Source: Macrostomum lignano
Taxonomy: Eukaryota
Direction of reading: 5' to 3'
Assembly (NCBI GenBank): GCA_002269645.1
Contig: NIVC01002916.1
Span: 62,001 to 126,000, forward strand
DNA length: 64,000 bases
Both the position numbers and the translations under genes were made by a program. The notes beneath the pieces are model-generated. The model worked only from the letters and a program-made list of their open reading frames with translations. It searched no databases and was not told the DNA's origin. Shown piece after piece: positions 1 to 64,000 of this stretch (position 1 is its first letter; each line of letters begins with the position of its first letter).

Positions 1-481
1 TTTGATCAGAATAGAAATTGCCGTGCACTTTTATACTTGTCATTAAGGGACAAAAGCTGGGCTGAATTCGAACTGCCTCAAAGCGTTGTGAGATTTCATT
101 GAGGCAGTTTGTAGTCAGCTGCAGCGTGCCGATCCCCTACTTCGCATCCCATTGTGCGCTGCCCCTGCTTGTGTGGCTATAAATATTTTAGCGTCTGCCC
201 GCCTGCGCTGCGTGCCTGGGATCGGGCAAGTGGAGGCTTGTCTGCGTCAGGCCCTTTTGTCACTGGCATCGGGAGGGGGAAAGTCAGACAGGGATTTGGG
301 GGCCGAGTGTCTGTCTGCTGCACTTTATTTATTTATTTAAGCTGCCGCAGTTACCCCTGAAAATGCATTAATTATTCATTTCGGCGATTGCAATTCCAAA
401 TTAGGAAAAAATAGCGTTTTTATGGCGGGATTATAAAATTGGGATTTCTAATTGACTGCCTCCCCGCCCCACCCCCGCCAG

Positions 482-1702
482 ACGGCTCGGGCTCGGCCGC
501 CTCGGGCCAGCTCCGTCTACCTGGCCCACCTGCTCGGCCAGGCGTCCTGTCGCCATGGTAACAGTCGACTTGGCGTCGGCGCCAGCTGTGCCAATTCGCG
601 CGCCTCCGACCTGCCGCTGGTGCCGCCCGACGCTGGCGCCGCTGCCGACTGCGGTGACGGCGCCGACCTCTCCGCGCCGCTGCCTTCGCTGTCCGGCGCT
701 GGGTCGCCGCAGTCAGCCGGCGGCTGGCAGGCGGACCCGGACTGCTGGCCTTGGCCGGAGCTGCCCGGCTTTCTCAGGCGCCTGGCCGCTGCCGACTCCC
801 GGCGGCTGTTTGCCAGCGTCGGCTCCGGCGGCTCCTCCGGCCGACTTAACGACGCCTGGCTGGGGCTGTGCAGGCGGCTGTGCAGCTTCTACTCGCCCTC
901 CGCGCTGGCCGCCCGCCCGCTGGACTGGCCCCACGCCAAGGACGCCGGCCTGTCCGCGCCGCATTTCGGCCGCCTGCTGGGCCGCCTGGCCGACCGCTGC
1001 CGCGTCCTGCACGCCTCCGCCTTCGACTTGGCGGCCGCCTGCGCCCGATTCTTTGACGAGGCCGCCGCCAAGCAGTCTGTGGCCATCGAGCTGGAGACCT
1101 CGTGCGCCCGGTGCGCTCTGCTGGTGGCCGCCTCCCTGCCGCCCGAGCTGCTCAACTCGACAGGCCTGTCGGTTGCTCTGGACCGCCTGCTCTCGGGTCC
1201 GCCCGGGCCCGCCAAGCTGCTGCTGGCCTCGCTGGACTACGCCAGGGGCGACTTCGGCCGGCGGGTGCTTCGCAAGGCTGTGGCGCCAGGCTCTAGCGCG
1301 GCCTCTGGCGCCGCCGCCTCCTCTGCCGGCGTAACCGCTGGCGCCGGCGTCGCCTCGGGTTCCTCAGCCGCGTCGAGCGGTCATTCGGCGGCCGGCACTG
1401 CAGCCGGTGCCGTCGGACCGTCGGCGTCGGCGGCCTCGATGACGAACGTCGCCCTGGCTGACGCGCCGCCTTCGGAGACCCGGCAGTTTGGCGTCCGCCT
1501 GCTGACGCTGCTGCTGCGGCTCGGCCTGGCCTGGGCCTGGGGGCCCGACCTGCTGCTGCGCCTGCTGCCCGACCCTGACGCCGCCGTGCAGGCCGCCGCC
1601 TTGGCCGCCTTGGAGGAGACCTGCGACCATCTGCAGCAGCAGCACTGGCTGAGCTCCTGCCTGCTGCGCCTGCCGGCTGCGGCCGCCCAGATTGGCGAAC
1701 AG
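482..1702 (+). CDS. rictor: Rictor (mTORC2 subunit), internal exon; the 5' part of the gene lies outside the window
   Basis: Acceptor ccgccag|482 and donor CAG|gtgaga at 1703 (phase 0). Motifs [24 protein letters not shown] and [23 protein letters not shown] match the Rictor middle region (SLDY..RVILSK; WGIELLVTQL..EALDILDEAC). Confidence 0.85.
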
Positions 1703-2410
1703 GTGAGATTTCTTTCCAGGGTGAGATTTCCATACAGAGTGAGATTTCCATGCAGGGTGAGATTTCCATGCAGGGTGGGATTTCCATGCAGGGTGGGATT
1801 TCCATGCAGGGTGGGATTTCCATGAAGGGTGGGATTTCCATCCAGGGTGGGATTTCCATGCAGGGTGAGATTTCCATGCAGGGTGGGATTTCCATGCAGG
1901 GTGAGATTTCCATGCAGGGTGAGATTTCCATGCAGGGTGGGATTTCCATGCAGGGTGAGATTTCCATGCAGGGTGAGATTTCCATGCAGGGTGGGATTTC
2001 CATGCAGGGTGGGATTTCCATACAGGGTGGGATTTCCATGCAGGGTGGGATTTCCATGCAGGGTGGGATTTCCATCCAGGGTGGGATTTCCATACAGAGT
2101 GAGATTTCCATGCAGGGTGAGATTTCCATGCAGGGTGGGATTTCCATGCAGGGTGGGATTTCCATGCAGGGTGGGATTTCCATGCAGGGTGGGATTTCCA
2201 TGCAGGGTGGGATTTCCATCCAGGGTGGGATTTCCATGCAGGGTGAGATTTCCATGCAGGGTGAGATTTCCATACAGAGTGAGATTTCCATACAGAGTGA
2301 GATTTCCATACAGGGTGAGATTTCCATACAGAGTGAGATTTCCATACACTGTGAGATTTCCATACAGAGTGAGATTTCCATACACTGTGAGATTTCCATA
2401 CACTGTGAGA
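1703..2410. repeat. 18-bp intronic minisatellite (GGTGAGATTTCCATGCAG)
   Basis: About 38 copies, starting at the donor. Confidence 0.95.
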
Positions 2411-2467
2411 TTCCAAAAATATTCAACGCGTTGCTGAACCAGAAAAATATCCCGAATGTCTCACCAG

Positions 2468-3267
2468 GCGGCGCCCCTCCTAGCGCGCCTGTGTGGCCAC
2501 CCGGCCGGCTACCGGGCCATGTCGGAGCGCGCCCTGCTGCAGCAGCAGTGGCAGCTGTGGCGCTGCGGCCTGTGCGCCAAATATCCGCACACTGTGGACA
2601 CTCTGCTGGCCGAGTCTTACGCCTCCTGCTGCCGGCTGCCAACCCACTTGCTCGGCCAGCTCGCCCGCCACTCGGACGGTGTCCGCTACCTGGCCGGCCA
2701 GTCCTACGTGGCCGGCCTGGCCCAGCGAGTTCGTGACCTCCCCGGTGAGGACGCCGAGTTCTGGTGCGACCGGGCGGAGGTGGCCGCCGCCAAGGCCGCG
2801 CTGTGGGCTGTCGGTCACGTGGCCTCCACTGAGCTCGGCCTGCTGCTGCTCGAAGGCCGGAGCGACGGCGACTGCGATAATGACGACGGCAACTGCGTCG
2901 GAATCGGAGTCGGCGCTGTGGCATCGATGGCGCAGCTGGCGCAGGCCTGCCCGGTACTCAGCGTCCGAGGCGTCTGCTTCTGGGCGCTGTGCCTTGTCGC
3001 CTCCAGCCAGGCTGGCGGCCGCCTTCTGGAGCGGCTGGGCTGGCTGCACTCGCGCGACTGCCACCGCTGGCTGGCCCGGCCGGTCTGCCTGTCTGACGAT
3101 GACCCAGCGGCGGCCGACTGCGCCGGGATCGTGTTCGATGAGGAGGACGAGTTTGTCGTTGGCTGCGGCGACGCTGCGTTTGGCAGCGGCTTCGAATTTG
3201 GCGAATCTGGCACTGGCGATGATGACACCTTCACTGCATCGTCTACTCAGTCTCCGAGGCCTGTCAG
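2468..3267 (+). CDS. rictor: Rictor exon
   Basis: Acceptor tcaccag|2468 (phase 0) and donor AG|gtgagg (phase 2). HLLGQLARH..AKAALWAVGHVAS..LAQACPVLSVRGVCFWALCLVA matches Rictor HLYGQL..KASLWALG..CEVLSIRGTC. Confidence 0.9.
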
Positions 3268-3311
3268 GTGAGGCCTGGTTGGCGTTGGGGCGAGTTATAT
3301 AAGGTTTGGTG

Positions 3312-3580
3312 TAGTTTGAGTAGCTGGGGTACAGTTTGAGTAGGTTGGGTACAGTTTGAGTAGCTTGGGTACAGTTTGAGTAGGTTGGGTACAGTTTTGA
3401 GTAGATTGGGTACAGTTTGAGTAGGTTGGGTACAGTTTTGAGTAGCTTGGGTACAGTTTGAGTAGGTTGGGTACAGTTTGAGTAGCTTGGGTGGAGATTG
3501 AGTAGGTTGGGTAGAGTTTGAGTAGCTTTGGTACAGCTTAAATAACTCGGGTGGATGTTGAGTAGGTTCTGCAAATTTGA
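3312..3580. repeat. 21/22-bp minisatellite (GTACAGTTTGAGTAGGTTGGG)
   Basis: Tandem copies in a Rictor intron. Confidence 0.9.
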
Positions 3581-4029
3581 GTAAGTTTATGTTCAGTTTA
3601 AGCAGGTTGAACTTGAGCACGTGTTACGAATCGTGCCCAGTTGGAAGTGTGGGTAGGGTTTTGATAATCGGCCGTAATTTAATAATGCGGCTATGAAGCT
3701 CCATCACTAATGAGCGATGGCGCAGGCAAACTCTTGTTCAAAGCCGGCTCTTAAATCAAGTGAAGCGGCTCACGCGGATTCCCAGCAGCCCAACAGTCCG
3801 AATTTCTGCGCCAAGATTGATTGGCAATCGGCCTCCCGCTGGGACTCTTTTTATTGCAAAATAGCGCAGCCTTATTGATGTTGCCTTCTCTGGCAGGCAG
3901 TGATTGATTGCTTCCCGCTGGCGCTTCAAAGTTGGGCTGCGGTTTTACCTGCCTGTCTATTGTGTCTTCAAATCGATTGAGACATGACTGCCGCGTAACT
4001 CCTGTGCCACCCCTGTCCAGTCCGCATTT

Positions 4030-5165
4030 TCTATCCGCTCCCTATCCGCCCTTAAGACACATTTTATATCCGCCCCCCCCATAGAGACACATTTTCTATC
4101 CGCTCCCTATCCGCCCTTAAGACACATTTTATATCCGCCCCCCCCCATAGAGACACATTTTCTATCCGCTCCCTATCCGCCCTTAAGACACATTTTCTAT
4201 CCGCCCCCATAAAGACACGTTTTCTATCCGCCCCCCCCCCCCATAAAGACACATTTTCTACCCGCCCCCACCAAAAAGACACATTTTCTACCCGCCCCCA
4301 CCATAAAGACACATTTTCTACCGCCCCCACCAAAAAGACACATTTTCTATCCGCCCCCATAAAGACACGTTTTCTATCCGCCCCCCCCCATAAAGACACA
4401 TTTTCTATCCGCCCCCACCATAAAGACACATTTTCTACCCGCCCCCACCAAAAAGACACATTTTCTACCCGCCCCCACCATAAAGACACATTTTCTACCG
4501 CCCCCACCAAAAAGACACATTTTCTATCCGCCCCCATAAAGACACGTTTTCTATCCGCCCCCCCCCCCCATAAAGACACATTTTCTATCCGCCCCCACCA
4601 TAAAGACACATTTTCTACCCGCCCCACCATAAAGACACATTTTCTACCCGCCCCCACCAAAAAGACACGTTTTCTATCCGCCCCCCCCATAAAGACACAT
4701 TTTCTACCCGCCCCACCAAAAAGACACGTTTTCTATCCGCCCCCCCATAAAGACACATTTTCTACACGCCCCCAAAAAAAACACATTTTCTATCCGACCC
4801 CCATAAAGACACATTTTCTATACGCCCCCATAAAGACACATTTTCTATCCGCCCCTTTAAAGACACATTTTCTATCCGCCCCTTTAAAGACACATTTTCT
4901 ATCCGCCCTATAGAGACACATTTTATATCAGCCCCATAAAGACACATTTTCTATCTGCTTCTGTAAAGACATATTTTCTATCCGCCCCTTTGAGGACACA
5001 TTTTCTATCCGCCCTATAGAGACACATTTTATATCAGCCCCATAAAGACACATTTTCTATCTGCTTCTGTAAAGACATATTTTCTATCCGCCCCTTTGAG
5101 GACACATTTTCTATCCGCCCTATAGAGACACATTTTCTATCCGCCCCCATAAAGACACATTTCCA
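4030..5165. repeat. ~28-32-bp minisatellite (AAAGACACATTTTCTATCCGCCCCC)
   Basis: Tandem copies with a variable C-run. Confidence 0.92.
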
Positions 5166-5305
5166 ACCGCCCCCAGACACATTCATCCGATCTATTCGCC
5201 CATATCGCCCACACACTGCACCTGTTCAAGCCCTTCAGGCACTGTTAATTCTACTATCAAGTGCACGCCCAGACCAGATCAATTGTCGTTCCCGTCCCGC
5301 CGCAG

Positions 5306-6236
5306 ACGCCGCAAAGGTCGCAGCTCGAGCGAAAGCGAGGACGTCCTGACCCGGATGCTGGTGCTGCCGGACGCCAGGCGGACCTGGACCGGCACCTCGG
5401 CCGCCAGCCTGCTCAGCCGGGTGCGCCAGCTCGGCGCCAACGTCACCGTCACCTCCGCCTCCCTGGCCGCCATCAGCCAGCAGCCGGTCTTCGCTGAGGA
5501 AGCCGCCGCGGCTGCCGCTGGCGCATCATCGATTCCGCCGCGCCGAGCGCCGCCACCAACGCCGGCCGGCCTGGCGCTGCCGCGCGACCCGCACGCGCTC
5601 ACCTTGCACCGGCACTGCGGCTCCGCGTTTGCCGCTGCGACCAGCGCCGCCGCCTCAGCATCTGCCGCGTCCGCCTCGACATCCGCGTCCTCCCAGAAGC
5701 AGCAGCGGCAGCAGCGGATTTCGTCTTCGCAGGCGCCACCGCCGCCGGACGATTCGGCGCCGACCAGCGGCTACGCCAGCTGCGTTGGCTCCCGCGCCCA
5801 GCTGGCCGGCCCGGAGCCCGGCGAGCTCCTCCTGCTGGCCGCCGCTAGCGACGCCGGCGGATCTCCGCCTGGCGAGGCCGCCCACGCCGAGGAGGCCTGC
5901 GTCGGCTGCCGGCTTCGACAGCACCGATCCGCCCGCCGGTGGACCGCGCAGACGCCGCCGCCCGATGCCGACGATTCTACGGCGGCTGCTGCCGCGTCGC
6001 CGGCGGGCACCGCTAGACGCGACGTGCTCAGGCTGGTCGGCCTGCTCACCTGCCAGGTGAATCTGGCAAAAAATGAAGACGCCCTGGTGCAGCTGCGCGC
6101 CCGCTGGCCCCGCCTGTTCGACCTGTGCCTGTACTCGGATGTCTCCCTGCTGCTGGCCAGGTTCCCCTACACCCGGCGCAACCGGGCCTTCGTGCAGGAC
6201 CTCTTCAGCGACCCCTGCTGCCGCCTGTTTTCCTGA
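5306..6236 (+). CDS. rictor: Rictor terminal exon
   Basis: Acceptor ccgcag|5306 is phase-compatible (AG+A=Arg). The C-terminus VLRLVGLL..FDLCLYSDVSLLL..RAFVQDLF matches the Rictor C-terminus. TGA at 6234-6236; AATAAA at 6284. Confidence 0.9.
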
Positions 6237-12622: not shown

Positions 12623-12811
12623 CTGGAACGGGGGAAATGATAGTACCTTCGTCAGCGGGCCAACCGACTACTGAAATTCGCCAAAATTCGAATACTTTCT
12701 TTTTTGGGAAAGTACATTTGGTCACCCTAAATCTACGCTCGTAATCTACGTAAGTTTTCTATCCCTTCGTCTTTGTACATTCTCTAGACCCGGACTTCGG
12801 TGATTTGCATT

Positions 12812-13240
12812 CACCAGCCCTAAGCTACGGTAATGTACATTCGCCAGCCCTAAGCTACGGTAATGTACATTCTCCAGCCCTAAGCTACGGTAATGTACAT
12901 TCGCCAGCCCTAAGCTACGGTAATGTACATTCTCTAGCCCTAAGCTACGGTAATGTACATTCTCTAGCCCTAAGCTACGGTAATGTACATTCTCTAGCCC
13001 TAAGCTACGGTAATGTACATTCTCTAGCCCTAAGCTACGGTAATGTACATTCTCTAGCCCTAAGCTACGGTAATGTACATTCTCTAGCCCTAAGCTACGG
13101 TAATGTACATTCTCCAGCCCTAAGCTACGGTAATGTACATTCTCCAGCCCTAAGCTACGGTAATGTACATTCTCCAGCCCTAAGCTACGGTAATGTACAT
13201 TCTCCAGCCCTAAGCTACGGTAATGTACATTCTCCAGCCC
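12812..13240. repeat. 30-bp minisatellite (CCCTAAGCTACGGTAATGTACATTCTCTAG)
   Basis: About 14 copies. Confidence 0.95.
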
Positions 13241-13288
13241 AACACTTCGGCCTTCTAATCTGTAGATAAACCGTTCCGCCGGCCTCAC

Positions 13289-13462
13289 CATGGTTTCCAG
13301 CTGCAGCCGCTCCGCGTTGTCCTCCGTGTGCCGCAGCACCTCCTGCAGCAGCAGGCCGTACTTGGTGATCCTCTGCAGCGGCATCGTCAGCAGCGACTTC
13401 AACTGCAGGTCCACCGTGCCGTCCTCAGCGTTGTAGTTGCGGCAGCTCATGCGGTGCGCCCA
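13289..13462 (-). CDS. PLEKHG5-like RhoGEF exon (DH domain CR3)
   Basis: ttgcag|TGG...ATG|gtgagg, 174 nt. LKSLLTMPLQRITKYGLLLQEVLRHT is the DH consensus. Confidence 0.9.
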
Positions 13463-13886
13463 CTGCAATGCAGGTCGCGGCTTCCTCTTTAGTGAGAAGA
13501 ACCGAGGACGGTAAACTCCGTTTCTTAGTAAATCTCTGTAGGCTGGCTTTACCCGAAGCACACAGACACACAGCCGAGATGGTACTTCCCATTTTCGCCA
13601 ATTTTTTTATGACTTTACTATCCGTTTTATTGATTTTTTCAAAGCTTTCTCGTAGTGAAAAGTTATTCTAAATATCACATTCTAAGGCTGATTGTATTTG
13701 AACTTAGGGTAGGAATTTCATCATTTTATAAAGAAAGGTCTGCAGAAATTAATAGAAGCAGTAAATGCTTGTGTTTTTAGCGCAAAGCCGGCCTTCAAAT
13801 ATTTTCTAAGAAACGAAGTTTACCGTATATTTAATCACGCCGTCCTTGACACGGACTAAAAGGGACGTCACCCCGAAGACCCGTAC

Positions 13887-14198
13887 CTTGACGAACTCGC
13901 CAAAGGACTCGCCCTTCTCCAAGCTACGCAGGTAGTCCTTGGCGTTACCGATCTGCAGGCAGTAGTCGGCGCAGGGCTGAAAGATTTCGCCGAATCGGAC
14001 AAAGCCGGACGCCAGCTGGCCCGGCCGGATGCGCTGGCCGGTGCGCCTGGCGGTCAGCAGGGCCGGGCGCAGGTGCTCGATCCACAGGCTCCGGTGAGCC
14101 AGGTAAACCAGGCTCAGACCGGGGAACAGCCTGTCCGTGTTCACCTCCGTCAGCAGGCCGCAGCTGCTCTGCAGATGCTGGATCACGGCGATGTACAC
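13887..14198 (-). CDS. PLEKHG5-like RhoGEF exon (DH domain)
   Basis: ccaag|GTG...AAG|gtacgg, 312 nt. GLLTEVNTDRLF..HRSLW..FVRFGEIFQPCADYC parallels GLLCEVEAERLF..HRRLW..FGSLFKPYIRYC. Confidence 0.88.
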
Positions 14199-14411
14199 CT
14201 TGGGGGAGGGCGGGGACGCTGATAAAGCACCGGTGATGTACACCTTGGGGGAGGGCGGGGACGCTGATAAAGCACCGGTGATGTACACCTTGGGGGCAGG
14301 CGGGGACGCTGATAAAGCACCGGTGATGTACACCTTGGGGGCAGGCGGGGACGCTGATAAAGCACCGGTGATGTACACCTTGGGGGCAGGCGGGGACGCT
14401 GATAAAGCACC
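14190..14411. repeat. 45-bp repeat x5 containing the splice acceptor
   Basis: atgtacaccttggggg at 14191, 14236, 14281, 14326 and 14371. Confidence 0.95.
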
Positions 14412-39523: not shown

Positions 39524-39993
39524 TCAGCAAGCCGAGCCGGTCGCGCAGTCGCTCTGCAGCTGCAGCCCCGTTGCTCCGCCGATGGCGGCCGCAGCACCCG
39601 CTGGGACCGGCGGCCGGGGCAGGCGCCGCTTAAGCCAGTCGTGGCGCAGAGCCTCACGCGGGGTCATCCTCTCCTCGGGCAGCCAGAGCAGGCAACGGCG
39701 CAGGAAGTCGAGGAACAGCGGATCCGCCGCAGCGCCGGTGCCTTTGAGGGCGGTCGGCAGGTCGCGGCTACCCGGAGGCCCGCGGAATTTGCCGCGCCTC
39801 GACCGGCCGCCCTTCAGCTGCGGCGAGCCGTCGGGGCCGGCGTCCACGGAGGAGTAGCGGGGCAGGCCGCGGGACGAGAAGAACACCTTGGTGCGCCGGC
39901 AGGCGTCAAGGAGGGCCTGCGGCGGCGTGCCGCACAGCTCCATGATGCAGGCCAGCTGGTCGCCTTCGTCCTCGCCGGGGAACAGCGGGTAGC
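39524..39993 (-). CDS. DYRK2: Class-2 DYRK kinase terminal exon
   Basis: cgcag|[53 protein letters not shown] is nearly identical to DYRK2. Confidence 0.93.
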
Positions 39994-40139
39994 CTGCGCG
40001 GCCATTGCGGGGTGCCAATTAGCGGGGGACGCGCAAAGGAAGGAAGGGCAAAGAAATGCGGGCAAAAAGGTAATCGCGGGGGCGGTCAAGCGTGAGGCAG
40101 GTGCAGCGCGGAGCAGGTGGGTTCGAAATGATACAGCTA

Positions 40140-41111
<972 letters not shown>

Positions 41112-41704
41112 TTATCGCGAAGAAAACCGCCGTCCCAGTTGCTCATCAGCTCATAATTAGGGCGAATACGGGCTCAAGCAATCTAGCTGCAGAAGCTGCA
41201 GAGCTCAGCGCTTTCGAGGCCCGGCCCTGTAATTCATCCTGTCCGCTGACTGAGCAAAGGAAACTCAAAAACTTCATCTTGGATGCCTTGTGGGAGGTTA
41301 GTACAGGGTGACAATGGTTGCCTAGGCAACCAGTACTTCGTCTTTTTCCTCTGGCTGGCTTTTACTCATAGAAGCGTTATCAGTATGGGACCGAGCGCTT
41401 CTAGTTTGAGGTAGAGGCTATTTGAGCTTGAGTTTGAAAACAGGCAGATTGATAGAAGGATTAAAAGAGACAAAAGAGTGCTGCTACGATTGGGTCGGAG
41501 CTCCGATATGTATCGAAAAACGATTATCTAAACTACATGCACATTGATGCAAATCGGCCAAGAAAATAAAGGCAAGGTAAGGAACCCGGTAAATATAAAG
41601 TGACGCTCCGCCGCAGGTAGTTTGGGAAGGATGGGCGACGAAAATCGGCAGGAAAATTCTCGATAAATTCAAAATGTCTCCAGTGTTACCTGGACCGGGT
41701 AACG

Positions 41705-42915
41705 AGACCCAAACCGCCTAACCCAGACCCAAACCCTAACCCTAAGCCTAACCTAGACCCAAACCGCCTAACCCAGACCCAAACCCTAACCCTAAGCCTA
41801 ACCCAGACCCAAACCGCCTAACCCAGACCCAAACCCTAAGCCAAACCCAAACCCTAACCCAGACCCAAACCCTAAGCCAAACCCAAACCCTAACCCAAAC
41901 CCAAACCCTAACCCAAACCCAAACCCTAAGCCAAACCCAAACCCTAAGCCAAACCCAAACCCTAAGCCAGACCCAAACCCTAAGCCAAACCCAAACCCTA
42001 ACCCAGACCCAAACCCTAAGCCAAACCCAAACCCTAAGCCAAACCCAAACCCTAAGCCAAACCCAAACCCTAAGCCAAACCCAAACCCTAAGCCAAACCC
42101 AAACCCTAAGCCAAACCCAAACCCTAAGCCAAACCCAAACCCTAAGCCAAACCCAAACCCTAAGCCAAACCCAAACCCTAAGCCAAACCCAAACCCTAAG
42201 CCAAACCCAAACCCTAAGCCAAACCCAAACCCTAAGCCAAACCCAAACCCTAAGCCAAACCCAAACCCTAAGCCAAACCCAAACCCTAAGCCAAACCCAA
42301 ACCCTAAGCCAAACCCAAACCCTAAGCCAAACCCAAACCCTAAGCCAAACCCAAACCCTAAGCCAAACCCAAACCCTAAGCCAAACCCAAACCCTAAGCC
42401 AAACCCAAACCCTAAGCCAAACCCAAACCCTAAGCCAAACCCAAACCCTAAGCCTAACCCAGACCCAAACACTAAGCCAAAGCCAAACCCTAACCCAAAC
42501 CCAAACCCTAAGCCTAACCCAGACCCAAACACTAAGCCAAACCCAAACCCTAAGCCAAACCCAAAGCCAAACCCTAAGCCAAACCCAAACCCTAAGCCAA
42601 ACCCAAACCCTAAGCCAAACCCAAACACTAAGCCAAACCCAAACCCTAAGCCAAACCCAAAGCCAAACCCTAAGCCAAACCCAAACCCTAAGCCAAACCC
42701 AAACCCTAAGCCAAACCCAAACCCTAAGCCAAAGCCAAACCCTAAGCCAAACCCAAACCCTAACCCAGACCCAAACACTAAGCCAAAGCCAAACCCTAAG
42801 CCAAACCCAAACCCTAAGCCAAACCCAAACCCAGACCCAAATCCAAAACCTAAGCCAAACCCAAACCCAGACCGAGACCGAGACCCAAACCCAAACCCTA
42901 ACCTAAACACTAACC
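41705..42915. repeat. 18-bp telomere-like minisatellite (AAACCCAAACCCTAAGCC)
   Basis: Built from CCCTAA/CCCAAA/GCCAAA hexamers. Confidence 0.95.
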
Positions 42916-42980
42916 TAAATTTTCGGGCTCCCACAGAACTTCTTTAACTATCAAATCACACATAAAACGCCGTTCCTCAC

Positions 42981-43324
42981 TTTGTTCCGGTGCAGCAGCT
43001 CAAGGCACTGCAGGATGGAGTGGGCGAACTTGCGCACCAGCTGCAGCGAAAATCCCTGGAAGCGATTCTTCCGCACCAGCTCGTAGAGGTTCATTGACAG
43101 CAGCTCGAACACGATGCACACGTGATTGCGGAAGCTGAAGGTCTCCAAAATGTGCACTACATTGCTGCAGCCCTCCCGGTCCTGACGTTTCAGCAGCTCC
43201 AGGATGCGGACCTCTTCGGCAGCTTGTCGACTGAACCGCTTCTCGTTGCGGACCATCTTCAGGGCCACGTGCTGCCCCGTCTTGTGGTCGAAGCACTTCA
43301 GTACCTGACCGAAGCTGCCCTTGC
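42981..43324 (-). CDS. DYRK2: DYRK kinase exon (Gly loop to subdomain VI)
   Basis: [49 protein letters not shown]; canonical splice sites. Confidence 0.95.
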
Positions 43325-57566: not shown

Positions 57567-58962
57567 GGGGTGCACGACAATTGACTGCCACAATTTGACT
57601 GCGGTCAATTTTAACTGCGGACAATTTGACTGCCGAGCAATTTGACTGCCGAGCAATTTGACTGCCGAGCAATTTGACTGCCGAGCAATTTGACTGCCGA
57701 GCAATTTGACTGCCGAGCAATTTGACTGCCGAGCAATTTGACTGCCGAGCAATTTGACTGCCGAGCAATTTGACTGCCGAGCAATTTGACTGCCGAGCAA
57801 TTTGACTGCCGAGCAATTTGACTGCTGAGCAATTTGACTGCCGAGCAATTTGACTGCACACAAAATAACTGCGGACAAAATGACTGCGGTGAATTTGACT
57901 GCCGACAATTTTACTGCCGACAAAATGACTGCGGCAACTTGACTGCCAGCAAAATGACTGCCTAAAAACACTCCAGTCTCTTTATTAATGATCGTATTTA
58001 TGCAAGGCTAGCAAGGCTTTTTACATGAGCAAAAATGGAAGCTACATTGGCTTTCAACAATACGTGCATGTTTATCTACTAGTAAAAGAAGCGTCATATC
58101 AAGAGAAGCGAAGTCATGTCAAACATAAAAGCCGTCATGTAAAACAAAAGAAAATTCATCAAACATAAAAGCAGCGTAAGGTTGCACATATAAGAAACGT
58201 AACCTAAAATATAAAGGAAGCGTCATTTAAAAATGTTTACGTCTTGGGATGTTAAGGCTTACGGGGGCGATTGCTGTGATTTTGAGGCTTACTGGGGGAA
58301 TTGCTGAGATCTCAATGCTTACTGGGGAATTGCTAAGATGTCAAGGCTTACAACGGGAAATTGCTGAGATGTCAAGACAAATAGGATACACATTTATAAT
58401 TTTCGTCTCTTGCTTATTGGCCGCCCCGAAGGGGTCGCAAGATTGCTATACTAATGGTCAAACTGATCTTTTACATGTAGCTGTGTTCAATGAATGCTGT
58501 TTATAGGGTTTTCTTTCTCCCATGTCATATTAATCTCATATTTTAATCTTATTGATTCTTTCAAATTTAAAAAAATGCCACATACTCCTCCTATCAGAAG
58601 AGCTTTATTAGGCCTAATCAAAGCTAAAGTTAGTGATACGCTAGCGCGCGGCTAGCTCTATAAGCAGCATTCATTGAACACAGCCACGCTGGTACATGTG
58701 GAGGATCCGTTTGAACATTAGTAGATATACATGCAAGTATTGTTGAAAGCCAAATGTAGCTTGCATTTTTGTTCATTGTAAAAAGTCTTGCTAGCCTTGC
58801 ATAAATACGATCATGAATAAAGAGACTGGAGAGTTTTTTAGGCAGTCATTTTTGGCAGTCATTTTGCTGGCAGTCATTTTGCTGGCAGTCAAATTGCCGC
58901 AATCATTTTGTCAGCAGTCAAATTGTTGGCAGTCAAATTGTCGGCAGTCATTTTGTCGGCAG
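57567..58962. mobile_element. Foldback-type non-autonomous element with long modular inverted arms
   Basis: 57964-58081 is the ~90% reverse complement of 58717-58845. Outer (tttgactgcc) arrays face (ggcagtca) arrays, and there is an inner IR pair at 58470-58507 / 58657-58700. The left arm has an expanded 16-bp repeat at 57610-57850. Confidence 0.75.
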
Positions 58963-59111
58963 TGTGGCGGCCAGACTACGCGACCGGCAGCACCAGTGCA
59001 GCCGCACTGGAAACCCCCCAACCTCTGTCTAGCTGATGTGGGGTGGTTGCGCACCAGCTTAGCCGGCTCCCTAAGCCAGGGGGTTGGCGTAGCCTATCAC
59101 GCCACGCCACA
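58963..59111. mobile_element. 149-bp TG...CA element (solo-LTR-like), truncating the foldback arm
   Basis: Termini TGTGGCG...CGCCACA; the first ~34 nt recur in reverse orientation at 36052-36093. Confidence 0.5.
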
Positions 59112-59551
59112 TGTTCGCACCTCCCTTGGCCCCTCATGAACCTCGCGCAGTTTGTTGTACATATAAATTTATACGCAAAGCAGCACAAAACTCATTCGAT
59201 CTATTGAAATTAAAAGGCCTTCCGCATTGATTTTGCATTTTGCATTTGAGCCTGACCAAAACTTTTTTGTTGCCCTTTGTTGCTATACATGCTACCATGT
59301 TACCGCATGCAAATGCAAAGTGCGCATACAAAATATGAAACGCGAATCGAATCCCTTGACTTGATAGAGTGGAGTGGAACTCGAAAGGAAGGAATCAGCA
59401 GACACCTATGCCGTATGCCCGTATGGTAAAAATTCAAGCAGCATCCAATCCAGTTGGCGGGCGCGGGCGGATTAGTGGGCCTGGGCCTAAGTATTAATGC
59501 ATGCAGCAGCTGGAGTTAGTTGATGAGCGCGCGGCATGCAGTTAAAGAGGC

Positions 59552-59557
59552 AAAAAA
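59552..59557 (-). terminator. Pol III T-run terminator of the 5S gene
   Basis: Six T residues on the minus strand at the 5S 3' end; the first T is the gene's last base. Confidence 0.85.
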
Positions 59558-59675
59558 GACAACAGCATTTGGTATTCCCAGGCGGTCACCCATCCAAGTA
59601 CTAACCAAACCCAACGTTGCTTAACTTCGGTGATCAGACGAGAACCGGTGTTTTCAACGTGGTATGGCCGTTGCC
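59557..59675 (-). rRNA. 5S rRNA, copy 1
   Basis: Minus strand reads GGCAACGGCCATACC..GATCACCGAAGTTAAGC..TTAGTACTTGGATGGGTGACCGCCTGGGAATACC..GCTGTTGTCT. 119 nt, helix I closes, followed by a T-run terminator. Confidence 0.98.
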
Positions 59676-59698
59676 ACTGGCTGATAGGAGCTGAGCTC

Positions 59699-59706
59699 AT
59701 AATTAA
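59699..59706 (-). promoter_or_regulatory. TATA-like element at about -24 to -31 of the 5S gene
   Basis: TTAATTAT on the minus strand at the position typical of 5S upstream elements; present in every unit. Confidence 0.4.
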
Positions 59707-59929
59707 CCTGAACCTGCAGCTACATGTATATACGGACCATACGGTACGGATCAATTGTGTGGGCCGCCTCTCGTCTATACTCTAATTATTGTAATATATA
59801 ATTAGTAATGCGGACGGATTTACCGCGCTCGTAGTATATAGTGAACTATAGTGGTGATTTGCAGTCAAGTCAAAGTCAACCTAACTAGCTCAACGCAAAC
59901 AGTAACGCGTACAGTCCAGCTTGACTCTG

Positions 59930-60212
59930 TATACTCAGCAACATTGAAAAGTCGCCACTCTATGCGCCAGTGATCAATTTGTCTTGGACTATTCTGAAAT
60001 AAAAGATGCCAGAAAAACTGATCGGGGTAGCTTTGATCCGTCCAAACCTCGCACACCGCTCCCCCACTCCATTCCTCAACTCAAGTCTGCCGTGGCGTAG
60101 CTGAGTTGCGTCGCTCGCAAATATTGAGAGAGACTTTACCTGCACTCTCTCAAAAGTGGCGACCACAGACGGAATCTTCTGTGATGGCGACTTTTCAATG
60201 TTGCTGAGTATA
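59930..60212. mobile_element. MITE, probably Tc1/mariner-type, in the 5S-SL spacer (also 61577-61859, 63224-63506)
   Basis: Perfect 28-bp inverted termini TATACTCAGCAACATTGAAAAGTCGCCA / TGGCGACTTTTCAATGTTGCTGAGTATA, including TA ends; no ORF. Confidence 0.75.
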
Positions 60213-60513
60213 ATTCATTGTTGGCGCCATCAACAAAGTTGTACATGTACATATGCACATCCGCACGCATAGAGCGATCTAAGAAATTACATTTGATTAT
60301 TGCAACTCGAAGAGATCTAGTATAGCCTAGTATAGCCTCTGTACACCGCGATGCATATGCGCGCTATATCATGCTATGCTATAATGGTGCAACAACTAAT
60401 TTACAACTTGCGGGTAAATAGAATATTTAGTTTAAAATAATTAGTAGGACACGCTAAATCCAGAATTACAATCAACCAACTATAATTAATTGATGTTGTC
60501 TTTAGCTTTGTTA

Positions 60514-60627
60514 GGCAGCCGCGGTAGCGCGGCTTGTCAAAAATTGAGTAGATCGCTCAATTGGATCCACGCGGTGTCTTACCATGCAAAATTAAGAGTC
60601 TTCGCAGTAAGAGACCGTCGATACGGC
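60514..60627 (-). ncRNA. Spliced-leader (SL) RNA gene, copy 1
   Basis: Leader GCCGTATCGACGGTCTCTTACTGCGAAGACTCTTAATTTTGCATG (60627-60583) ends in ATG and is followed by the donor GTAAGA, which pairs with TCTTAC. Sm site AATTTTTGA at 60545-60537; terminal hairpin AGCCGCG-CTAC-CGCGGCT. Ends are approximate. Confidence 0.9.
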
Positions 60628-61203
60628 AAAGAGACGAGCTGGAACCGGCTCTCACTGAGTGCACAGCTCTCCGTTTGAGCCTCGAGCCCTAGGGCAAATT
60701 ATTTTGTTGAACTTTATCTACTCCAAGTAAGTTTTGCCGACTAGTGCAGCATTATTTTGCACTAGAGCTTGAAAAGAGCTGCGCGAAAAAGTTTCTTTCT
60801 TTCTTTTAGCCGACATGTTTAGAAAGTGTGCACACAAACGCGCCTCCTAGTTGATTGATTGATGGCTATAAATCAAGTAAAATTCCCATGTGAGAAATGG
60901 AGATACTCGTAAAACTATTAATACACAGTGCATAAGTGCATTAGCGTTACCGCGTGCAAATGCAAAGTGCGCATACAAAATATGAAACGCGAATCGAATC
61001 CCTTGACTTGATAGAGTGGAGTGGAACTCGAAAGGAAGGAATCAGCAGACACCTATGCCGTATGCCCGTATGGTAAAAATTCAAGCAGCATCCAATCCAG
61101 TTGGCGGGCGCGGGCGGATTAGTGGGCCTGGGCCTAAGTATTAATGCATGCAGCAGCTGGAGTTAGTTGATGAGCGCGCGGCATGCAGTTAAAGAGGCAA
61201 AAA

Positions 61204-61322
61204 AGACAACAGCATTTGGTATTCCCAGGCGGTCACCCATCCAAGTACTAACCAAACCCAACGTTGCTTAACTTCGGTGATCAGACGAGAACCGGTGTTT
61301 TCAACGTGGTATGGCCGTTGCC
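61204..61322 (-). rRNA. 5S rRNA, copy 2
   Basis: Identical to copy 1, offset +1647. Confidence 0.98.
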
Positions 61323-62160
61323 ACTGGCTGATAGGAGCTGAGCTCATAATTAACCTGAACCTGCAGCTACATGTATATACGGACCATACGGTACGGATCA
61401 ATTGTGTGGGCCGCCTCTCGTCTATACTCTAATTATTGTAATATATAATTAGTAATGCGGACGGATTTACCGCGCTCGTAGTATATAGTGAACTATAGTG
61501 GTGATTTGCAGTCAAGTCAAAGTCAACCTAACTAGCTCAACGCAAACAGTAACGCGTACAGTCCAGCTTGACTCTGTATACTCAGCAACATTGAAAAGTC
61601 GCCACTCTATGCGCCAGTGATCAATTTGTCTTGGACTATTCTGAAATAAAAGATGCCAGAAAAACTGATCGGGGTAGCTTTGATCCGTCCAAACCTCGCA
61701 CACCGCTCCCCCACTCCATTCCTCAACTCAAGTCTGCCGTGGCGTAGCTGAGTTGCGTCGCTCGCAAATATTGAGAGAGACTTTACCTGCACTCTCTCAA
61801 AAGTGGCGACCACAGACGGAATCTTCTGTGATGGCGACTTTTCAATGTTGCTGAGTATAATTCATTGTTGGCGCCATCAACAAAGTTGTACATGTACATA
61901 TGCACATCCGCACGCATAGAGCGATCTAAGAAATTACATTTGATTATTGCAACTCGAAGAGATCTAGTATAGCCTAGTATAGCCTCTGTACACCGCGATG
62001 CATATGCGCGCTATATCATGCTATGCTATAATGGTGCAACAACTAATTTACAACTTGCGGGTAAATAGAATATTTAGTTTAAAATAATTAGTAGGACACG
62101 CTAAATCCAGAATTACAATCAACCAACTATAATTAATTGATGTTGTCTTTAGCTTTGTTA

Positions 62161-62274
62161 GGCAGCCGCGGTAGCGCGGCTTGTCAAAAATTGAGTAGAT
62201 CGCTCAATTGGATCCACGCGGTGTCTTACCATGCAAAATTAAGAGTCTTCGCAGTAAGAGACCGTCGATACGGC
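62161..62274 (-). ncRNA. SL RNA gene, copy 2
   Basis: Identical to copy 1, offset +1647. Confidence 0.9.
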
Positions 62275-62850
62275 AAAGAGACGAGCTGGAACCGGCTCTC
62301 ACTGAGTGCACAGCTCTCCGTTTGAGCCTCGAGCCCTAGGGCAAATTATTTTGTTGAACTTTATCTACTCCAAGTAAGTTTTGCCGACTAGTGCAGCATT
62401 ATTTTGCACTAGAGCTTGAAAAGAGCTGCGCGAAAAAGTTTCTTTCTTTCTTTTAGCCGACATGTTTAGAAAGTGTGCACACAAACGCGCCTCCTAGTTG
62501 ATTGATTGATGGCTATAAATCAAGTAAAATTCCCATGTGAGAAATGGAGATACTCGTAAAACTATTAATACACAGTGCATAAGTGCATTAGCGTTACCGC
62601 GTGCAAATGCAAAGTGCGCATACAAAATATGAAACGCGAATCGAATCCCTTGACTTGATAGAGTGGAGTGGAACTCGAAAGGAAGGAATCAGCAGACACC
62701 TATGCCGTATGCCCGTATGGTAAAAATTCAAGCAGCATCCAATCCAGTTGGCGGGCGCGGGCGGATTAGTGGGCCTGGGCCTAAGTATTAATGCATGCAG
62801 CAGCTGGAGTTAGTTGATGAGCGCGCGGCATGCAGTTAAAGAGGCAAAAA

Positions 62851-62969
62851 AGACAACAGCATTTGGTATTCCCAGGCGGTCACCCATCCAAGTACTAACC
62901 AAACCCAACGTTGCTTAACTTCGGTGATCAGACGAGAACCGGTGTTTTCAACGTGGTATGGCCGTTGCC
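62851..62969 (-). rRNA. 5S rRNA, copy 3
   Basis: Identical to copy 1, offset +3294. Confidence 0.98.
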
Positions 62970-63807
62970 ACTGGCTGATAGGAGCTGAGCTCATAATTAA
63001 CCTGAACCTGCAGCTACATGTATATACGGACCATACGGTACGGATCAATTGTGTGGGCCGCCTCTCGTCTATACTCTAATTATTGTAATATATAATTAGT
63101 AATGCGGACGGATTTACCGCGCTCGTAGTATATAGTGAACTATAGTGGTGATTTGCAGTCAAGTCAAAGTCAACCTAACTAGCTCAACGCAAACAGTAAC
63201 GCGTACAGTCCAGCTTGACTCTGTATACTCAGCAACATTGAAAAGTCGCCACTCTATGCGCCAGTGATCAATTTGTCTTGGACTATTCTGAAATAAAAGA
63301 TGCCAGAAAAACTGATCGGGGTAGCTTTGATCCGTCCAAACCTCGCACACCGCTCCCCCACTCCATTCCTCAACTCAAGTCTGCCGTGGCGTAGCTGAGT
63401 TGCGTCGCTCGCAAATATTGAGAGAGACTTTACCTGCACTCTCTCAAAAGTGGCGACCACAGACGGAATCTTCTGTGATGGCGACTTTTCAATGTTGCTG
63501 AGTATAATTCATTGTTGGCGCCATCAACAAAGTTGTACATGTACATATGCACATCCGCACGCATAGAGCGATCTAAGAAATTACATTTGATTATTGCAAC
63601 TCGAAGAGATCTAGTATAGCCTAGTATAGCCTCTGTACACCGCGATGCATATGCGCGCTATATCATGCTATGCTATAATGGTGCAACAACTAATTTACAA
63701 CTTGCGGGTAAATAGAATATTTAGTTTAAAATAATTAGTAGGACACGCTAAATCCAGAATTACAATCAACCAACTATAATTAATTGATGTTGTCTTTAGC
63801 TTTGTTA

Positions 63808-63921
63808 GGCAGCCGCGGTAGCGCGGCTTGTCAAAAATTGAGTAGATCGCTCAATTGGATCCACGCGGTGTCTTACCATGCAAAATTAAGAGTCTTCGCA
63901 GTAAGAGACCGTCGATACGGC
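63808..63921 (-). ncRNA. SL RNA gene, copy 3
   Basis: Identical to copy 1, offset +3294. Confidence 0.9.
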
Positions 63922-64000
63922 AAAGAGACGAGCTGGAACCGGCTCTCACTGAGTGCACAGCTCTCCGTTTGAGCCTCGAGCCCTAGGGCAAATTATTTTG

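What the first reader, a model, noticed from the sequence alone, without database searches (positions are those of the whole stretch)
59299..64000. Hidden SL (trans-splicing) RNA gene co-arrayed with 5S rRNA in a 1647-bp tandem unit
Seen: each 5S spacer holds, on the 5S strand, a ~114-nt unit with a 5' hairpin (CCGT-ATCG-ACGG) and a 45-nt leader ending in ATG, directly followed by GTAAGA. TCTTAC-TGCGAAG pairs with TTTTGCA-(TG)-GTAAGA, burying the donor in a stem. An Sm site (AATTTTTGA) and a GC-rich 3' hairpin follow. Known: this is SL RNA architecture, flatworm leaders end in AUG, and 5S-SL linkage has arisen repeatedly (C. elegans SL1, euglenids, some dinoflagellates and kinetoplastids). Inference: this is a Pol II/Pol III co-amplified 5S-SL cassette under concerted evolution in a free-living flatworm. 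I do not know of it being described for this lineage, but cannot check.
Basis: partly seen in the sequence, partly recalled or inferred. Interest (0 to 1): 0.9.

Follow-up and report, generated by a model that had tools for sequence, protein, structure and literature searches.

The report
Variant spliced-leader gene inside 5S array
The end of this window is the edge of the 5S ribosomal RNA gene array of the flatworm Macrostomum lignano (or a sibling), and every 1647-bp repeat also carries an intact-looking spliced-leader RNA gene whose leader differs at 7 of 44 bases from the only leader reported for this animal.

Summary
**Observation: confirmed.**
- From 59299 to the window end there are 2.85 copies of a 1647-bp unit, with one mismatch among them.
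- Each unit carries a full 5S rRNA gene (Rfam 116.5 bits).
- On the same strand, each carries a ~113-nt RNA gene with spliced-leader (SL) RNA anatomy: a leader ending in AUG, a GUAAGA donor buried in a stem, two hairpins and an Sm site (AAUUUUUGA).

**What it is.**
- A covariance model built only from canonical Macrostomum SL RNA genes found elsewhere hits it full-length (54 bits, E about 1e-10). Nothing else in the window is hit.
- The window is M. lignano or a sibling. A UniRef M. lignano protein matches its exons, and the published 5S primers predict a 1643-bp product against 1645 bp reported.

- The Macrostomum leader is already published, and this gene's leader differs from it at 7 of 44 positions.
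- All differences fall in loops or keep the pairing.
- A second macrostomid contig has the canonical SL gene 268 nt upstream of a 5S gene, so the linkage is not peculiar to this assembly.

**Not shown.** Whether the variant RNA is made, or used on mRNAs, could not be tested. I found no paper that describes the linkage or the variant. I file it as a new member of a known kind, of moderate interest.

The parts
59299..64000 (-). 5S-SL tandem array: 2.85 units of 1647 bp, with the left edge at 59299. It runs off the window end.
   Evidence: Lag-1647 and lag-3294 comparison shows a single mismatch, at 59307. No copy of the unit occurs in window 1-59298.
59557..59675 (-). 5S rRNA gene, copy 1
   Evidence: Rfam RF00001, 116.5 bits, model positions 1-120. 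A T-run lies directly downstream.
61204..61322 (-). 5S rRNA gene, copy 2
   Evidence: Rfam RF00001, 116.5 bits. It is 116 of 119 nt identical to the 5S gene of L006.
62851..62969 (-). 5S rRNA gene, copy 3
   Evidence: Rfam RF00001, 116.5 bits.
60511..60626 (-). Variant SL RNA gene, copy 1. The 3' end of the RNA is not mapped. Sub-parts: leader exon 60583-60626 (44 nt, ends ATG at 60583-60585); GT donor 60581-60582; hairpin II 60548-60570; Sm site AATTTTTGA 60537-60545; hairpin III 60517-60534.
   Evidence: Sequence; fold; hit by the model of canonical Macrostomum SL RNA at 54.4 bits, full length.
62158..62273 (-). Variant SL RNA gene, copy 2 (identical to copy 1)
63805..63920 (-). Variant SL RNA gene, copy 3 (identical to copy 1)
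60627..60712 (-). Upstream flank of SL gene copy 1. CTCTTTG at -7..-1 is conserved (as CTCTTTG, CTCCTTG or TTCTTTG) before every Macrostomum SL gene seen. AACAAAA..TGCC at about -83..-66 is a weak candidate for a proximal sequence element.
   Evidence: Alignment and sequences. Shuffle test p about 0.1-0.17, and the distal motif is absent from L011, so the distal element is suggestive only.
61577..61859 (.). 283-bp MITE-like insertion between the SL gene and the 5S gene. It is present in every unit (also 59930-60212 and 63224-63506).
   Evidence: 28-nt perfectly complementary terminal inverted repeats, including a terminal TA.

Best explanation
The window ends in the proximal edge of the 5S rDNA array of Macrostomum lignano or a very close sibling.

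**Layout of each 1647-bp unit, both genes on the minus strand.**
- A 5S rRNA gene, presumably transcribed by Pol III from its internal promoter, ending at a T-run.
- 577 nt downstream of it, a roughly 113-nt gene of the Macrostomum SL RNA family.
- The next 5S gene starts 838 nt after that SL gene. This stretch includes a 283-bp MITE-like insertion.

**How the two genes stay together.** They are carried in one repeat and kept identical by concerted evolution (unequal exchange or gene conversion).

**Age of the linkage.** It is not private to this genome. Another macrostomid contig has SL followed by 5S in the same order and on the same strand.

**What the SL-family gene is.** It is a divergent paralogue of the canonical Macrostomum SL RNA. 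It keeps the conserved 5' part of the leader, the AUG|GUAAGACAC donor buried in stem I, two downstream hairpins and an Sm site. It differs from the canonical gene in the loop of the 5' hairpin, in leader positions 32-38 and in most of the intron.

**Inferred mechanism, not shown.** The gene is transcribed by Pol II from an snRNA-type promoter. A Pol III reading is unlikely because the Sm site itself is a T5 run. The RNA would receive a TMG cap, bind Sm proteins and donate a 44-nt variant leader ending in AUG to some pre-mRNAs, as a minor or specialised leader beside the canonical one.

**Shown:** the anatomy, family membership, linkage, homogenisation and structure-preserving divergence.

**Inferred:** transcription, Sm binding and use in trans-splicing.
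For: **5S genes and array.**

**Family membership.**
- The window's leader is identical to the published leader CCGTAAAGACGGTCTCTTACTGCGAAGACTCAATTTATTGCATG (PMC5173321; PMC10468722 supplement) at 37 of 44 positions.
- Columns 39-55 (GCATG|GTAAGACAC) show no difference.
- Model R1, built only from the canonical genes of L003 and L006, hits the three window copies full-length at 54.4 bits, E about 1e-10, and nothing else in the window.

**Same three-part fold.** The variant and the canonical genes fold alike, with z-scores of -3.8, -3.4 and -4.7.

**Structure-preserving divergence.**
- On the model-fitted alignment 97.4% of cells pair.
- Six pairs change on both sides, all contributed by the variant (five in hairpin II, one in hairpin III).
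- Only 1 of 500 shuffles reaches this, and slid controls pair at 34-46%.

**Spacer decay.** Between the window unit and L006 only the 5S gene (97.7%) and the SL gene (85%) can still be aligned. The rest of the spacer cannot.

**Linkage elsewhere.** L006 has a canonical SL gene at 123-229, then 268 nt, then a 5S gene at 498-616 on the same strand.

**Species and unit size.**

**Known precedent.** In C. elegans Pol II binds SL1 and Pol III acts in the 5S rDNA-SL1 cluster (abstract of 10.64898/2026.01.07.698080, listed).
Against: - No evidence of transcription or of the variant leader on any mRNA could be obtained here.
- Published work reports a single leader for M. lignano (PMC12582326; PMC8629364).
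- The variant string occurs in none of the papers searched.
- All five other Macrostomum-type leader or gene sequences found in public contigs carry the canonical leader: L001, L002, L003, L006 and L011.
- The variant's intron is far more diverged (about 44% mismatched columns) than canonical genes are from each other (96% column identity). That would also fit relaxed constraint.
- The candidate upstream promoter element is not statistically supported (p about 0.1-0.17) and is absent from L011.
- The structure counts come from an alignment fitted to the model, and part of the hairpin II signal is a register shift.
Confidence: 0.55

Rival explanations
1. The 5S-linked copy is a silent or non-functional relic. 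An ancestral 5S-linked canonical SL gene, as still seen in L006, lost its role in the M. lignano lineage. It now hitch-hikes in the 5S unit and is amplified and homogenised only because the 5S gene is. All trans-splicing uses the canonical leader encoded elsewhere; eight copies were reported.
For: - Only one leader is reported in M. lignano transcriptomes.
- The variant string is absent from the literature searched.
- The variant's intron has diverged much faster than canonical genes have between contigs.
- The upstream motif is not significant.
- If a FISH-visible array of such genes were active, the variant leader should be abundant and hard to miss. This last point is inference.
Against: - The donor, Sm site and all three helices are intact.
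- The substitutions avoid stems or are compensated.
- The 5' 31 nt of the leader differ only in a hairpin loop.
- The surrounding spacer has decayed beyond alignment while the SL gene has not.
- The Sm site (AAUUUUUGA) fits the Sm consensus I recall (own knowledge) at least as well as the canonical one (UAUUUUUAG).
- Published leader searches used consensus k-mers or exact matches to the canonical leader, so a minor variant could have been missed.
Confidence: 0.33
2. The window comes from an unsampled Macrostomum species whose main leader is this sequence. It would then be that species' ordinary SL gene, not a paralogue.
For: - Species assignment rests on one protein and on primer or amplicon agreement.
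- No 100% self-hit for the window's proteins was seen in the protein collection.
Against: - UniRef M. lignano protein P0009 matches window exons at 92 of 93 and 43 of 45 residues, including stretches that match only in a shifted frame. This is what two assemblies of one species would give.
- The published M. lignano 5S primers match exactly, and the predicted product is within 2 bp of the published one.
- M. lignano, M. cliftonense and M. hystrix all share the canonical leader, so a close relative with a different main leader is unlikely.
Confidence: 0.07
3. Assembly artefact: the SL-like segment was joined to the 5S repeats by mis-assembly, or the tandem structure is a collapsed or duplicated artefact.
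For: Tandem arrays at contig ends are error-prone. The copies are suspiciously identical.
Against: - An independent PCR product of 1645 bp from M. lignano genomic DNA, made with outward 5S primers, fits the unit.
- An independent ENA contig links SL and 5S in the same order.
- The array joins unique sequence cleanly at 59299.
Confidence: 0.03

Closest known systems
Canonical Macrostomum SL RNA gene (M. lignano 109-bp gene, Ustyantsev & Berezikov 2021, PMC8629364; same leader in M. cliftonense and M. hystrix, PMC10468722)
   Same: - The leader has the same length and ends in AUG.
- 37 of 44 leader positions are identical, including GGTCTCTTACTGCGAAGACTC.
- The donor context ATG|GTAAGACACCG is identical.
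- It has the same three-helix fold with an Sm site between hairpins II and III.
- It has the same CTCTTTG just upstream of +1.
   Different: - Seven leader positions differ: the loop AAAG becomes ATCG, and CAATTTATT becomes CTTAATTTT.
- The 3' strand of hairpin II is replaced and the hairpin is 3-4 nt longer.
- Hairpin III is lengthened from 5 to 7 bp.
- The Sm site reads AAUUUUUGA instead of UAUUUUUAG.
- It sits in the 5S array. The canonical genes seen here sit next to a Na/K-ATPase beta gene (L003), a U1 snRNA gene (L011) or a 5S gene (L006).
- Use of the variant on mRNAs is unknown.
C. elegans SL1-5S rDNA tandem cluster (about 1-kb unit on chromosome V) and the 5S-SL repeats of other nematodes
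   Same: One tandem unit holds a Pol III 5S gene and an SL RNA gene, and the copies are homogenised. In C. elegans the cluster recruits both Pol II and Pol III (abstract).
   Different: - The phylum differs and the origin is presumably independent.
- The unit is 1647 bp.
- Both genes are on the same strand. In C. elegans they are divergent (own knowledge).
- In C. elegans the linked gene encodes the major leader. Here it encodes a variant that has not been seen on mRNAs.
5S-SL linkage in Oikopleura dioica, euglenids, some kinetoplastids and dinoflagellates (own knowledge; the general statement is in PMC7346339)
   Same: There is recurrent co-residence of SL RNA and 5S genes in tandem repeats of a few kilobases or less.
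   Different: These lineages have unrelated SL sequences. None is a flatworm.
Tandem SL RNA arrays of parasitic flatworms (Schistosoma mansoni 595-nt repeat, PMC2770079; Echinococcus, Taenia and Fasciola clusters, PMC12582326)
   Same: They are flatworm SL RNA genes in same-strand tandem repeats under concerted evolution, with leaders ending in AUG.
   Different: Those descriptions do not mention a 5S gene in the repeat. [quoted passage not shown]

Membership tests
5S rRNA (Rfam RF00001) | Full-length match to the 5S covariance model above the gathering score | tested here: met
   116.5 bits against a gathering score of 38, model positions 1-120, three copies.
5S rRNA (Rfam RF00001) | Pol III terminator T-run directly after the gene | tested here: met
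   The gene's final U plus TTTTT directly downstream form a T6 run in the window; L006 shows the same arrangement.
Macrostomum / flatworm SL RNA | Sequence and structure homology to canonical SL RNA genes of the genus | tested here: met
   Model R1, built from L003 and L006 only, hits the window at 54.4 bits, E about 1e-10, positions 1-107. There is no match to any Rfam SL family, but the flatworm SL RNAs found here also match no Rfam family.
Macrostomum / flatworm SL RNA | Leader exon at the 5' end, ending in AUG and followed at once by a GU donor that is base-paired with the leader | tested here: met
   The sequence reads ...TTTTGCATG|GTAAGA, and stem I pairs UCUUAC with GUAAGA.
Macrostomum / flatworm SL RNA | Single-stranded Sm-binding site between two 3' hairpins | tested here: met
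   AAUUUUUGA is unpaired in both the minimum-energy and centroid folds, between hairpins II and III. Binding itself was not tested.
Macrostomum / flatworm SL RNA | The leader is found at the 5' ends of many mRNAs, joined at AG acceptors | not testable with these tools
   No RNA-seq reads are available. The two environmental transcripts found (L001, L002) carry the canonical leader. The variant string is in no paper searched.
Macrostomum / flatworm SL RNA | Pol II snRNA-type promoter (proximal sequence element), TMG cap | tested here: inconclusive
   The -7..-1 CTCTTTG is shared by all SL genes seen. A distal AAC(A/G)AAA..TGCC motif lies at about -83..-66 in three of four genes, but shuffle p is about 0.1-0.17. 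The cap is not testable.
5S-linked SL RNA tandem repeat (as in the C. elegans SL1-5S cluster) | An SL RNA gene and a 5S gene within one unit that is repeated head to tail | tested here: met
   1647-bp unit, 2.85 copies, one mismatch. The published amplicon size supports the unit.
5S-linked SL RNA tandem repeat (as in the C. elegans SL1-5S cluster) | The linked SL gene supplies the organism's functional (major) leader | tested here: not met
   The encoded leader differs at 7 of 44 positions from the only leader reported for M. lignano. Whether it supplies a minor leader is open.

The most novel reading that the evidence does not exclude
M. lignano has a second, so far unnoticed spliced leader. 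It would be encoded in high copy inside the 5S rDNA array and kept under selection for SL RNA structure. It would be used on a subset of mRNAs, for example at a particular stage, in a particular tissue or on a particular gene class, beside the canonical leader from dispersed genes. That would make Macrostomum a flatworm with two SL classes that differ in genomic home. It would also show that 5S-SL linkage arose, or was kept, in Platyhelminthes as well.
Probability: 0.35. Interest if true: 0.6.

Novelty: new member of a known kind. Interest (0 to 1): 0.45.

Why it matters
**For flatworm biology.** M. lignano is a transgenic model for regeneration and stem cells, and about 30% of its genes are reported to be trans-spliced. 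Its annotation pipelines trim and map reads with one leader sequence. If a second leader exists, those pipelines miss trans-splice sites and operon boundaries. The question of SL specialisation, thought absent in flatworms (PMC12582326), would then be reopened.

**For genome evolution.** The locus adds a flatworm case to the recurrent 5S-SL linkage. It offers a natural comparison within one genus: a 5S-linked canonical gene (L006), a 5S-linked divergent gene (this window), and U1-linked or dispersed canonical genes. That comparison bears on whether residence in a 5S array drives an SL gene's divergence or protects it.

**Practical point.** The 1645-bp '5S rDNA' FISH probe used in Macrostomum cytogenetics also contains an SL RNA gene and a MITE-like element. 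It is not only a 5S gene plus non-transcribed spacer.

**If the copy is silent.** It is then an ordinary hitch-hiking paralogue.

Tried and rejected
**Rfam.** Scans at gathering and at E up to 10 found no SL family match, only 5S. Rfam matched none of the flatworm SL RNA genes found here either, so this says nothing.

**Exact look-up of two spurious ORFs in the unit**, to find the same repeat in public assemblies: not on record.

**Protein-style search with the ORF that reads through the 5S gene**.
- It gave one useful contig, L006.
- L004/L005 (5S plus a tRNA cluster), L007 (5S in a 3.9-kb repeat with LanC-like and DDAH genes), L008, L009 and L010 (5S next to a histone gene) are other organisms without an SL-like motif.

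**Upstream promoter comparison.** The best local alignments fall at the same offset but are not significant (p 0.11-0.17), and L011 lacks the motif. I therefore do not claim a proximal sequence element.

**Literature.**
- The papers I opened on the Macrostomum SL, Macrostomum 5S rDNA or parasitic-flatworm SL arrays do not mention a 5S-SL linkage in flatworms, a second Macrostomum leader or the variant string. One combined search was too broad to be useful.
- Wasik et al. 2015 (PNAS) is not held, so its text was not checked.
- The 109-bp M. lignano gene sequence appears only in a figure.

**Considered but not run: a peptide search for leader-derived N-termini of partial ORFs in RNA-seq assemblies.** Short-k assemblies would keep at most about 8-9 leader-derived residues. 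In my estimate that would put E-values in the thousands against 5.8 billion sequences, and the variant has an in-frame TAA before its ATG. I left the third protein search unused.

**Scan limit.** That scan returned only canonical sequences.

Full report
**1. What is in the sequence**

From 59299 to the end of the window the sequence repeats with a period of 1647 bp, giving 2.85 units. Comparing the array with itself at lags of one and two units gives a single mismatch, at 59307, nine bases inside the left edge. Tandem Repeats Finder did not report the array because its longest period is 500.

Rfam finds three full-length 5S rRNA genes on the minus strand: 59557-59675, 61204-61322 and 62851-62969, each at 116.5 bits. 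A T-run follows each.

Folded as RNA it gives -37.6 kcal/mol, z = -3.8. The fold has these parts:
- a long stem I in which UCUUAC-UGCGAA pairs with UUUUGCA..GUAAGA, so the GU donor is buried;
- a second hairpin;
- an unpaired AAUUUUUGA;
- a GC-rich 7-bp third hairpin.

Two details differ. By homology the leader is 44 nt.

**2. Whose genome this is**

The rest of the window is ordinary animal chromosome. It has Rictor exons, RhoGEF exons and DYRK2-like kinase exons, with introns full of micro- and minisatellites.

The kinase exons match a UniRef protein of Macrostomum lignano (P0009) at 92 of 93 and 43 of 45 residues. Some stretches agree only when read in a shifted frame. That is what two assemblies of the same species with indel errors would give.

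Zadesenets et al. (PMC5704211) amplified a 1645-bp '5S rDNA' fragment from M. lignano genomic DNA with outward-facing primers 5SF and 5SR. Both primers match the window's 5S gene exactly and predict a 1643-bp product.

I take the window to be M. lignano or a very close sibling. I also take the 1647-bp unit to be real and not an assembly chimera. That paper and its successor (PMC7013459) describe the fragment as coding plus non-transcribed spacer.

**3. It belongs to the Macrostomum SL RNA family, but it is not the known leader**

The 18-mer CTCTTACTGCGAAGACTC occurs in two papers on M. lignano. The published leader is CCGTAAAGACGGTCTCTTACTGCGAAGACTCAATTTATTGCATG (PMC5173321). [quoted passage not shown] A 109-bp SL RNA gene, present eight times in the deduplicated M. 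lignano assembly, was described by Ustyantsev and Berezikov (PMC8629364).

The window's leader differs from that sequence at 7 of 44 positions: 6-7, and five positions within 32-38. Neither the canonical leader nor its 3' half occurs anywhere in the window.

To obtain canonical genes for comparison I scanned public contigs for the 21-mer shared by both leaders.
- JGI metagenomes gave two transcripts with the canonical leader at their 5' ends (L001, L002).
- They also gave one genomic canonical SL RNA gene beside a Na/K-ATPase beta gene (L003).
- The GTDB genome collection gave a eukaryotic contaminant contig, filed under a Flavobacteriaceae MAG (L011). It has a canonical SL RNA gene 300 nt downstream of a U1 snRNA gene.

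A covariance model built only from two canonical genes (L003 and L006) hits the three window copies full-length at 54.4 bits, with a rough E of about 1e-10. It hits nothing else in the 64 kb. Rfam's own SL families do not match any of these genes.

**4. The 5S-SL linkage also occurs in a second macrostomid contig**

I used the spurious ORF that reads through the 5S gene as a handle in the protein collection. This recovered an ENA metagenome contig, L006, whose 5S gene is 116 of 119 nt identical to the window's.

On L006 a canonical SL RNA gene (123-229) lies 268 nt upstream of the 5S gene (498-616), on the same strand. This is the same order and orientation as in the window. There the SL-to-5S distance is 838 nt, of which 283 nt is a MITE-like insertion with 28-nt perfect inverted ends.

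Between the window unit and L006 only the 5S gene and the SL gene can still be aligned. The rest of the spacer cannot.

Other 5S contigs retrieved the same way belong to other organisms and have no SL-like element.

**5. Active gene or relic?**

*For function.*
- The pattern of divergence is not that of decay. Leader positions 1-31 differ only in the loop of the 5' hairpin.
- The last six leader bases and the donor context (GCATG|GTAAGACAC) are unchanged.
- The remaining intron has about 44% mismatched columns, yet all three helices survive.
- On the model-fitted alignment 97.4% of cells pair, and six pairs change on both sides, all contributed by the variant. Only 1 of 500 shuffles matches this, and slid controls pair at 34-46%. 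I note that this alignment leans towards the structure, and that part of the hairpin II signal is a register shift.
- Hairpin III grows from AGCC-C...G-GGCU to AGCC-GCG...CGC-GGCU. The Sm site reads AAUUUUUGA.

*Against function.*
- The literature reports one leader for M. lignano.
- The variant string is in no paper searched.
- All five other Macrostomum-type sequences I found are canonical.
- Canonical genes from different contigs are 96% identical to each other, so the variant has evolved much faster.
- Apart from CTCTTTG at -7..-1, which is shared by all the genes, the upstream similarity is not significant (p 0.11-0.17) and is missing in L011.
- A FISH-visible array of active variant genes should make the variant leader abundant (inference). 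However, published leader discovery used consensus k-mers or exact matches to the canonical leader, so a minor leader could have escaped notice.

I could not test transcription or use on mRNAs with the tools available.

**6. Most likely mechanism**

*Shown:* a homogenised tandem unit that holds a 5S gene and an SL-family gene on one strand.

*Inferred:*
- Pol III transcribes the 5S gene.
- Pol II transcribes the SL gene. Its internal T5 run would stop Pol III, and in C. elegans the 5S rDNA-SL1 cluster recruits both Pol II, which binds the SL1 gene, and Pol III (abstract listed).
- The RNA binds Sm proteins and donates a 44-nt leader ending in AUG.
- Unequal exchange and gene conversion keep the copies identical, so the SL gene's copy number and fate are tied to those of the 5S gene.

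I put about 0.55 on the gene being a competent SL RNA that is used at some level. I put about 0.33 on a silent hitch-hiker, about 0.07 on the window belonging to a species whose main leader is this sequence, and about 0.03 on an artefact.

**7. Comparison with what is known, and novelty**

SL RNA genes inside 5S repeats are a known, recurrent arrangement. Examples are the C. elegans SL1-5S cluster and other nematodes, Oikopleura, euglenids, and some kinetoplastids and dinoflagellates. The general statement is in PMC7346339. The individual cases come from my own knowledge.

SL trans-splicing and the SL RNA of Macrostomum are also known.

I could not find three things in the literature available to me:
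- any 5S-SL linkage in a flatworm; the descriptions of SL arrays in Schistosoma, Echinococcus, Taenia and Fasciola do not mention 5S;
- any mention that the Macrostomum 5S unit contains an SL gene;
- this variant leader.

This is a new member of a known kind, with an open and easily testable question attached. It is a modest surprise for a specialist, not a new kind of system. Interest 0.45.

Noticed in passing
window 61577-61859 (also 59930-60212 and 63224-63506): A 283-bp MITE-like element sits in the spacer between the SL gene and the 5S gene. It has 28-nt perfectly complementary ends (TATACTCAGCAACATTGAAAAGTCGCCA), so it was inserted before the array was homogenised. There is no other copy in the window. 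An element in L003 (about 1136-1425) has similar ends (TACTCAGCAAAAG...).
   Followed up: partly
window about 57580-58963: A foldback-like element has nested inverted arms (up to 95 nt at 91%, and 62 nt at 95%) built from 16-bp TTGACTGCCGAGCAAT-type subrepeats. It ends about 340 bp before the edge of the 5S array.
   Followed up: partly
L011 (JAGQZA010000190.1) 1121-1283 and 1590-1695: A contig filed under a Flavobacteriaceae MAG (HKST-UBA79) is really flatworm DNA. It carries a U1 snRNA gene (Rfam 151.7 bits), then 300 nt later a canonical Macrostomum SL RNA gene on the same strand, with TTAGGG-like repeats at 270-340. This is contamination of the MAG, and it shows SL-U1 linkage.
   Followed up: partly
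L006 1141-1200: A second start, CCGTTTTGACGGTCTCTT, is preceded by the same 13 nt as the true SL gene on that contig. It lacks the ATG|GTAAG donor and is not matched by the SL model. It may be a degenerate copy or another small RNA that uses the same promoter-proximal sequence. The contig ends in an Illumina adapter (1268-1293).
   Followed up: no
window 452-6236 (+), 12746-14378 (-), 39524-43256 (-): There are exons of Rictor (RICTOR_V, 70 bits), a RhoGEF and a DYRK2-like kinase. Their introns are packed with micro- and minisatellites, which create long spurious ORFs in several frames.
   Followed up: partly
window 59225-59320: Just outside the array edge, TTTGCATTTTGCATTTGAG (59231-59249) is an inverted near-copy of TGCAAATGCAAAG (59308-59320) just inside it. 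This could be microhomology at the array junction.
   Followed up: no
L010 208-926; L004 1-5040: In other organisms' contigs, a 5S gene lies next to a histone gene (L010), and three 5S genes with a 186-bp period lie beside about 20 tRNA genes (L004/L005).
   Followed up: no
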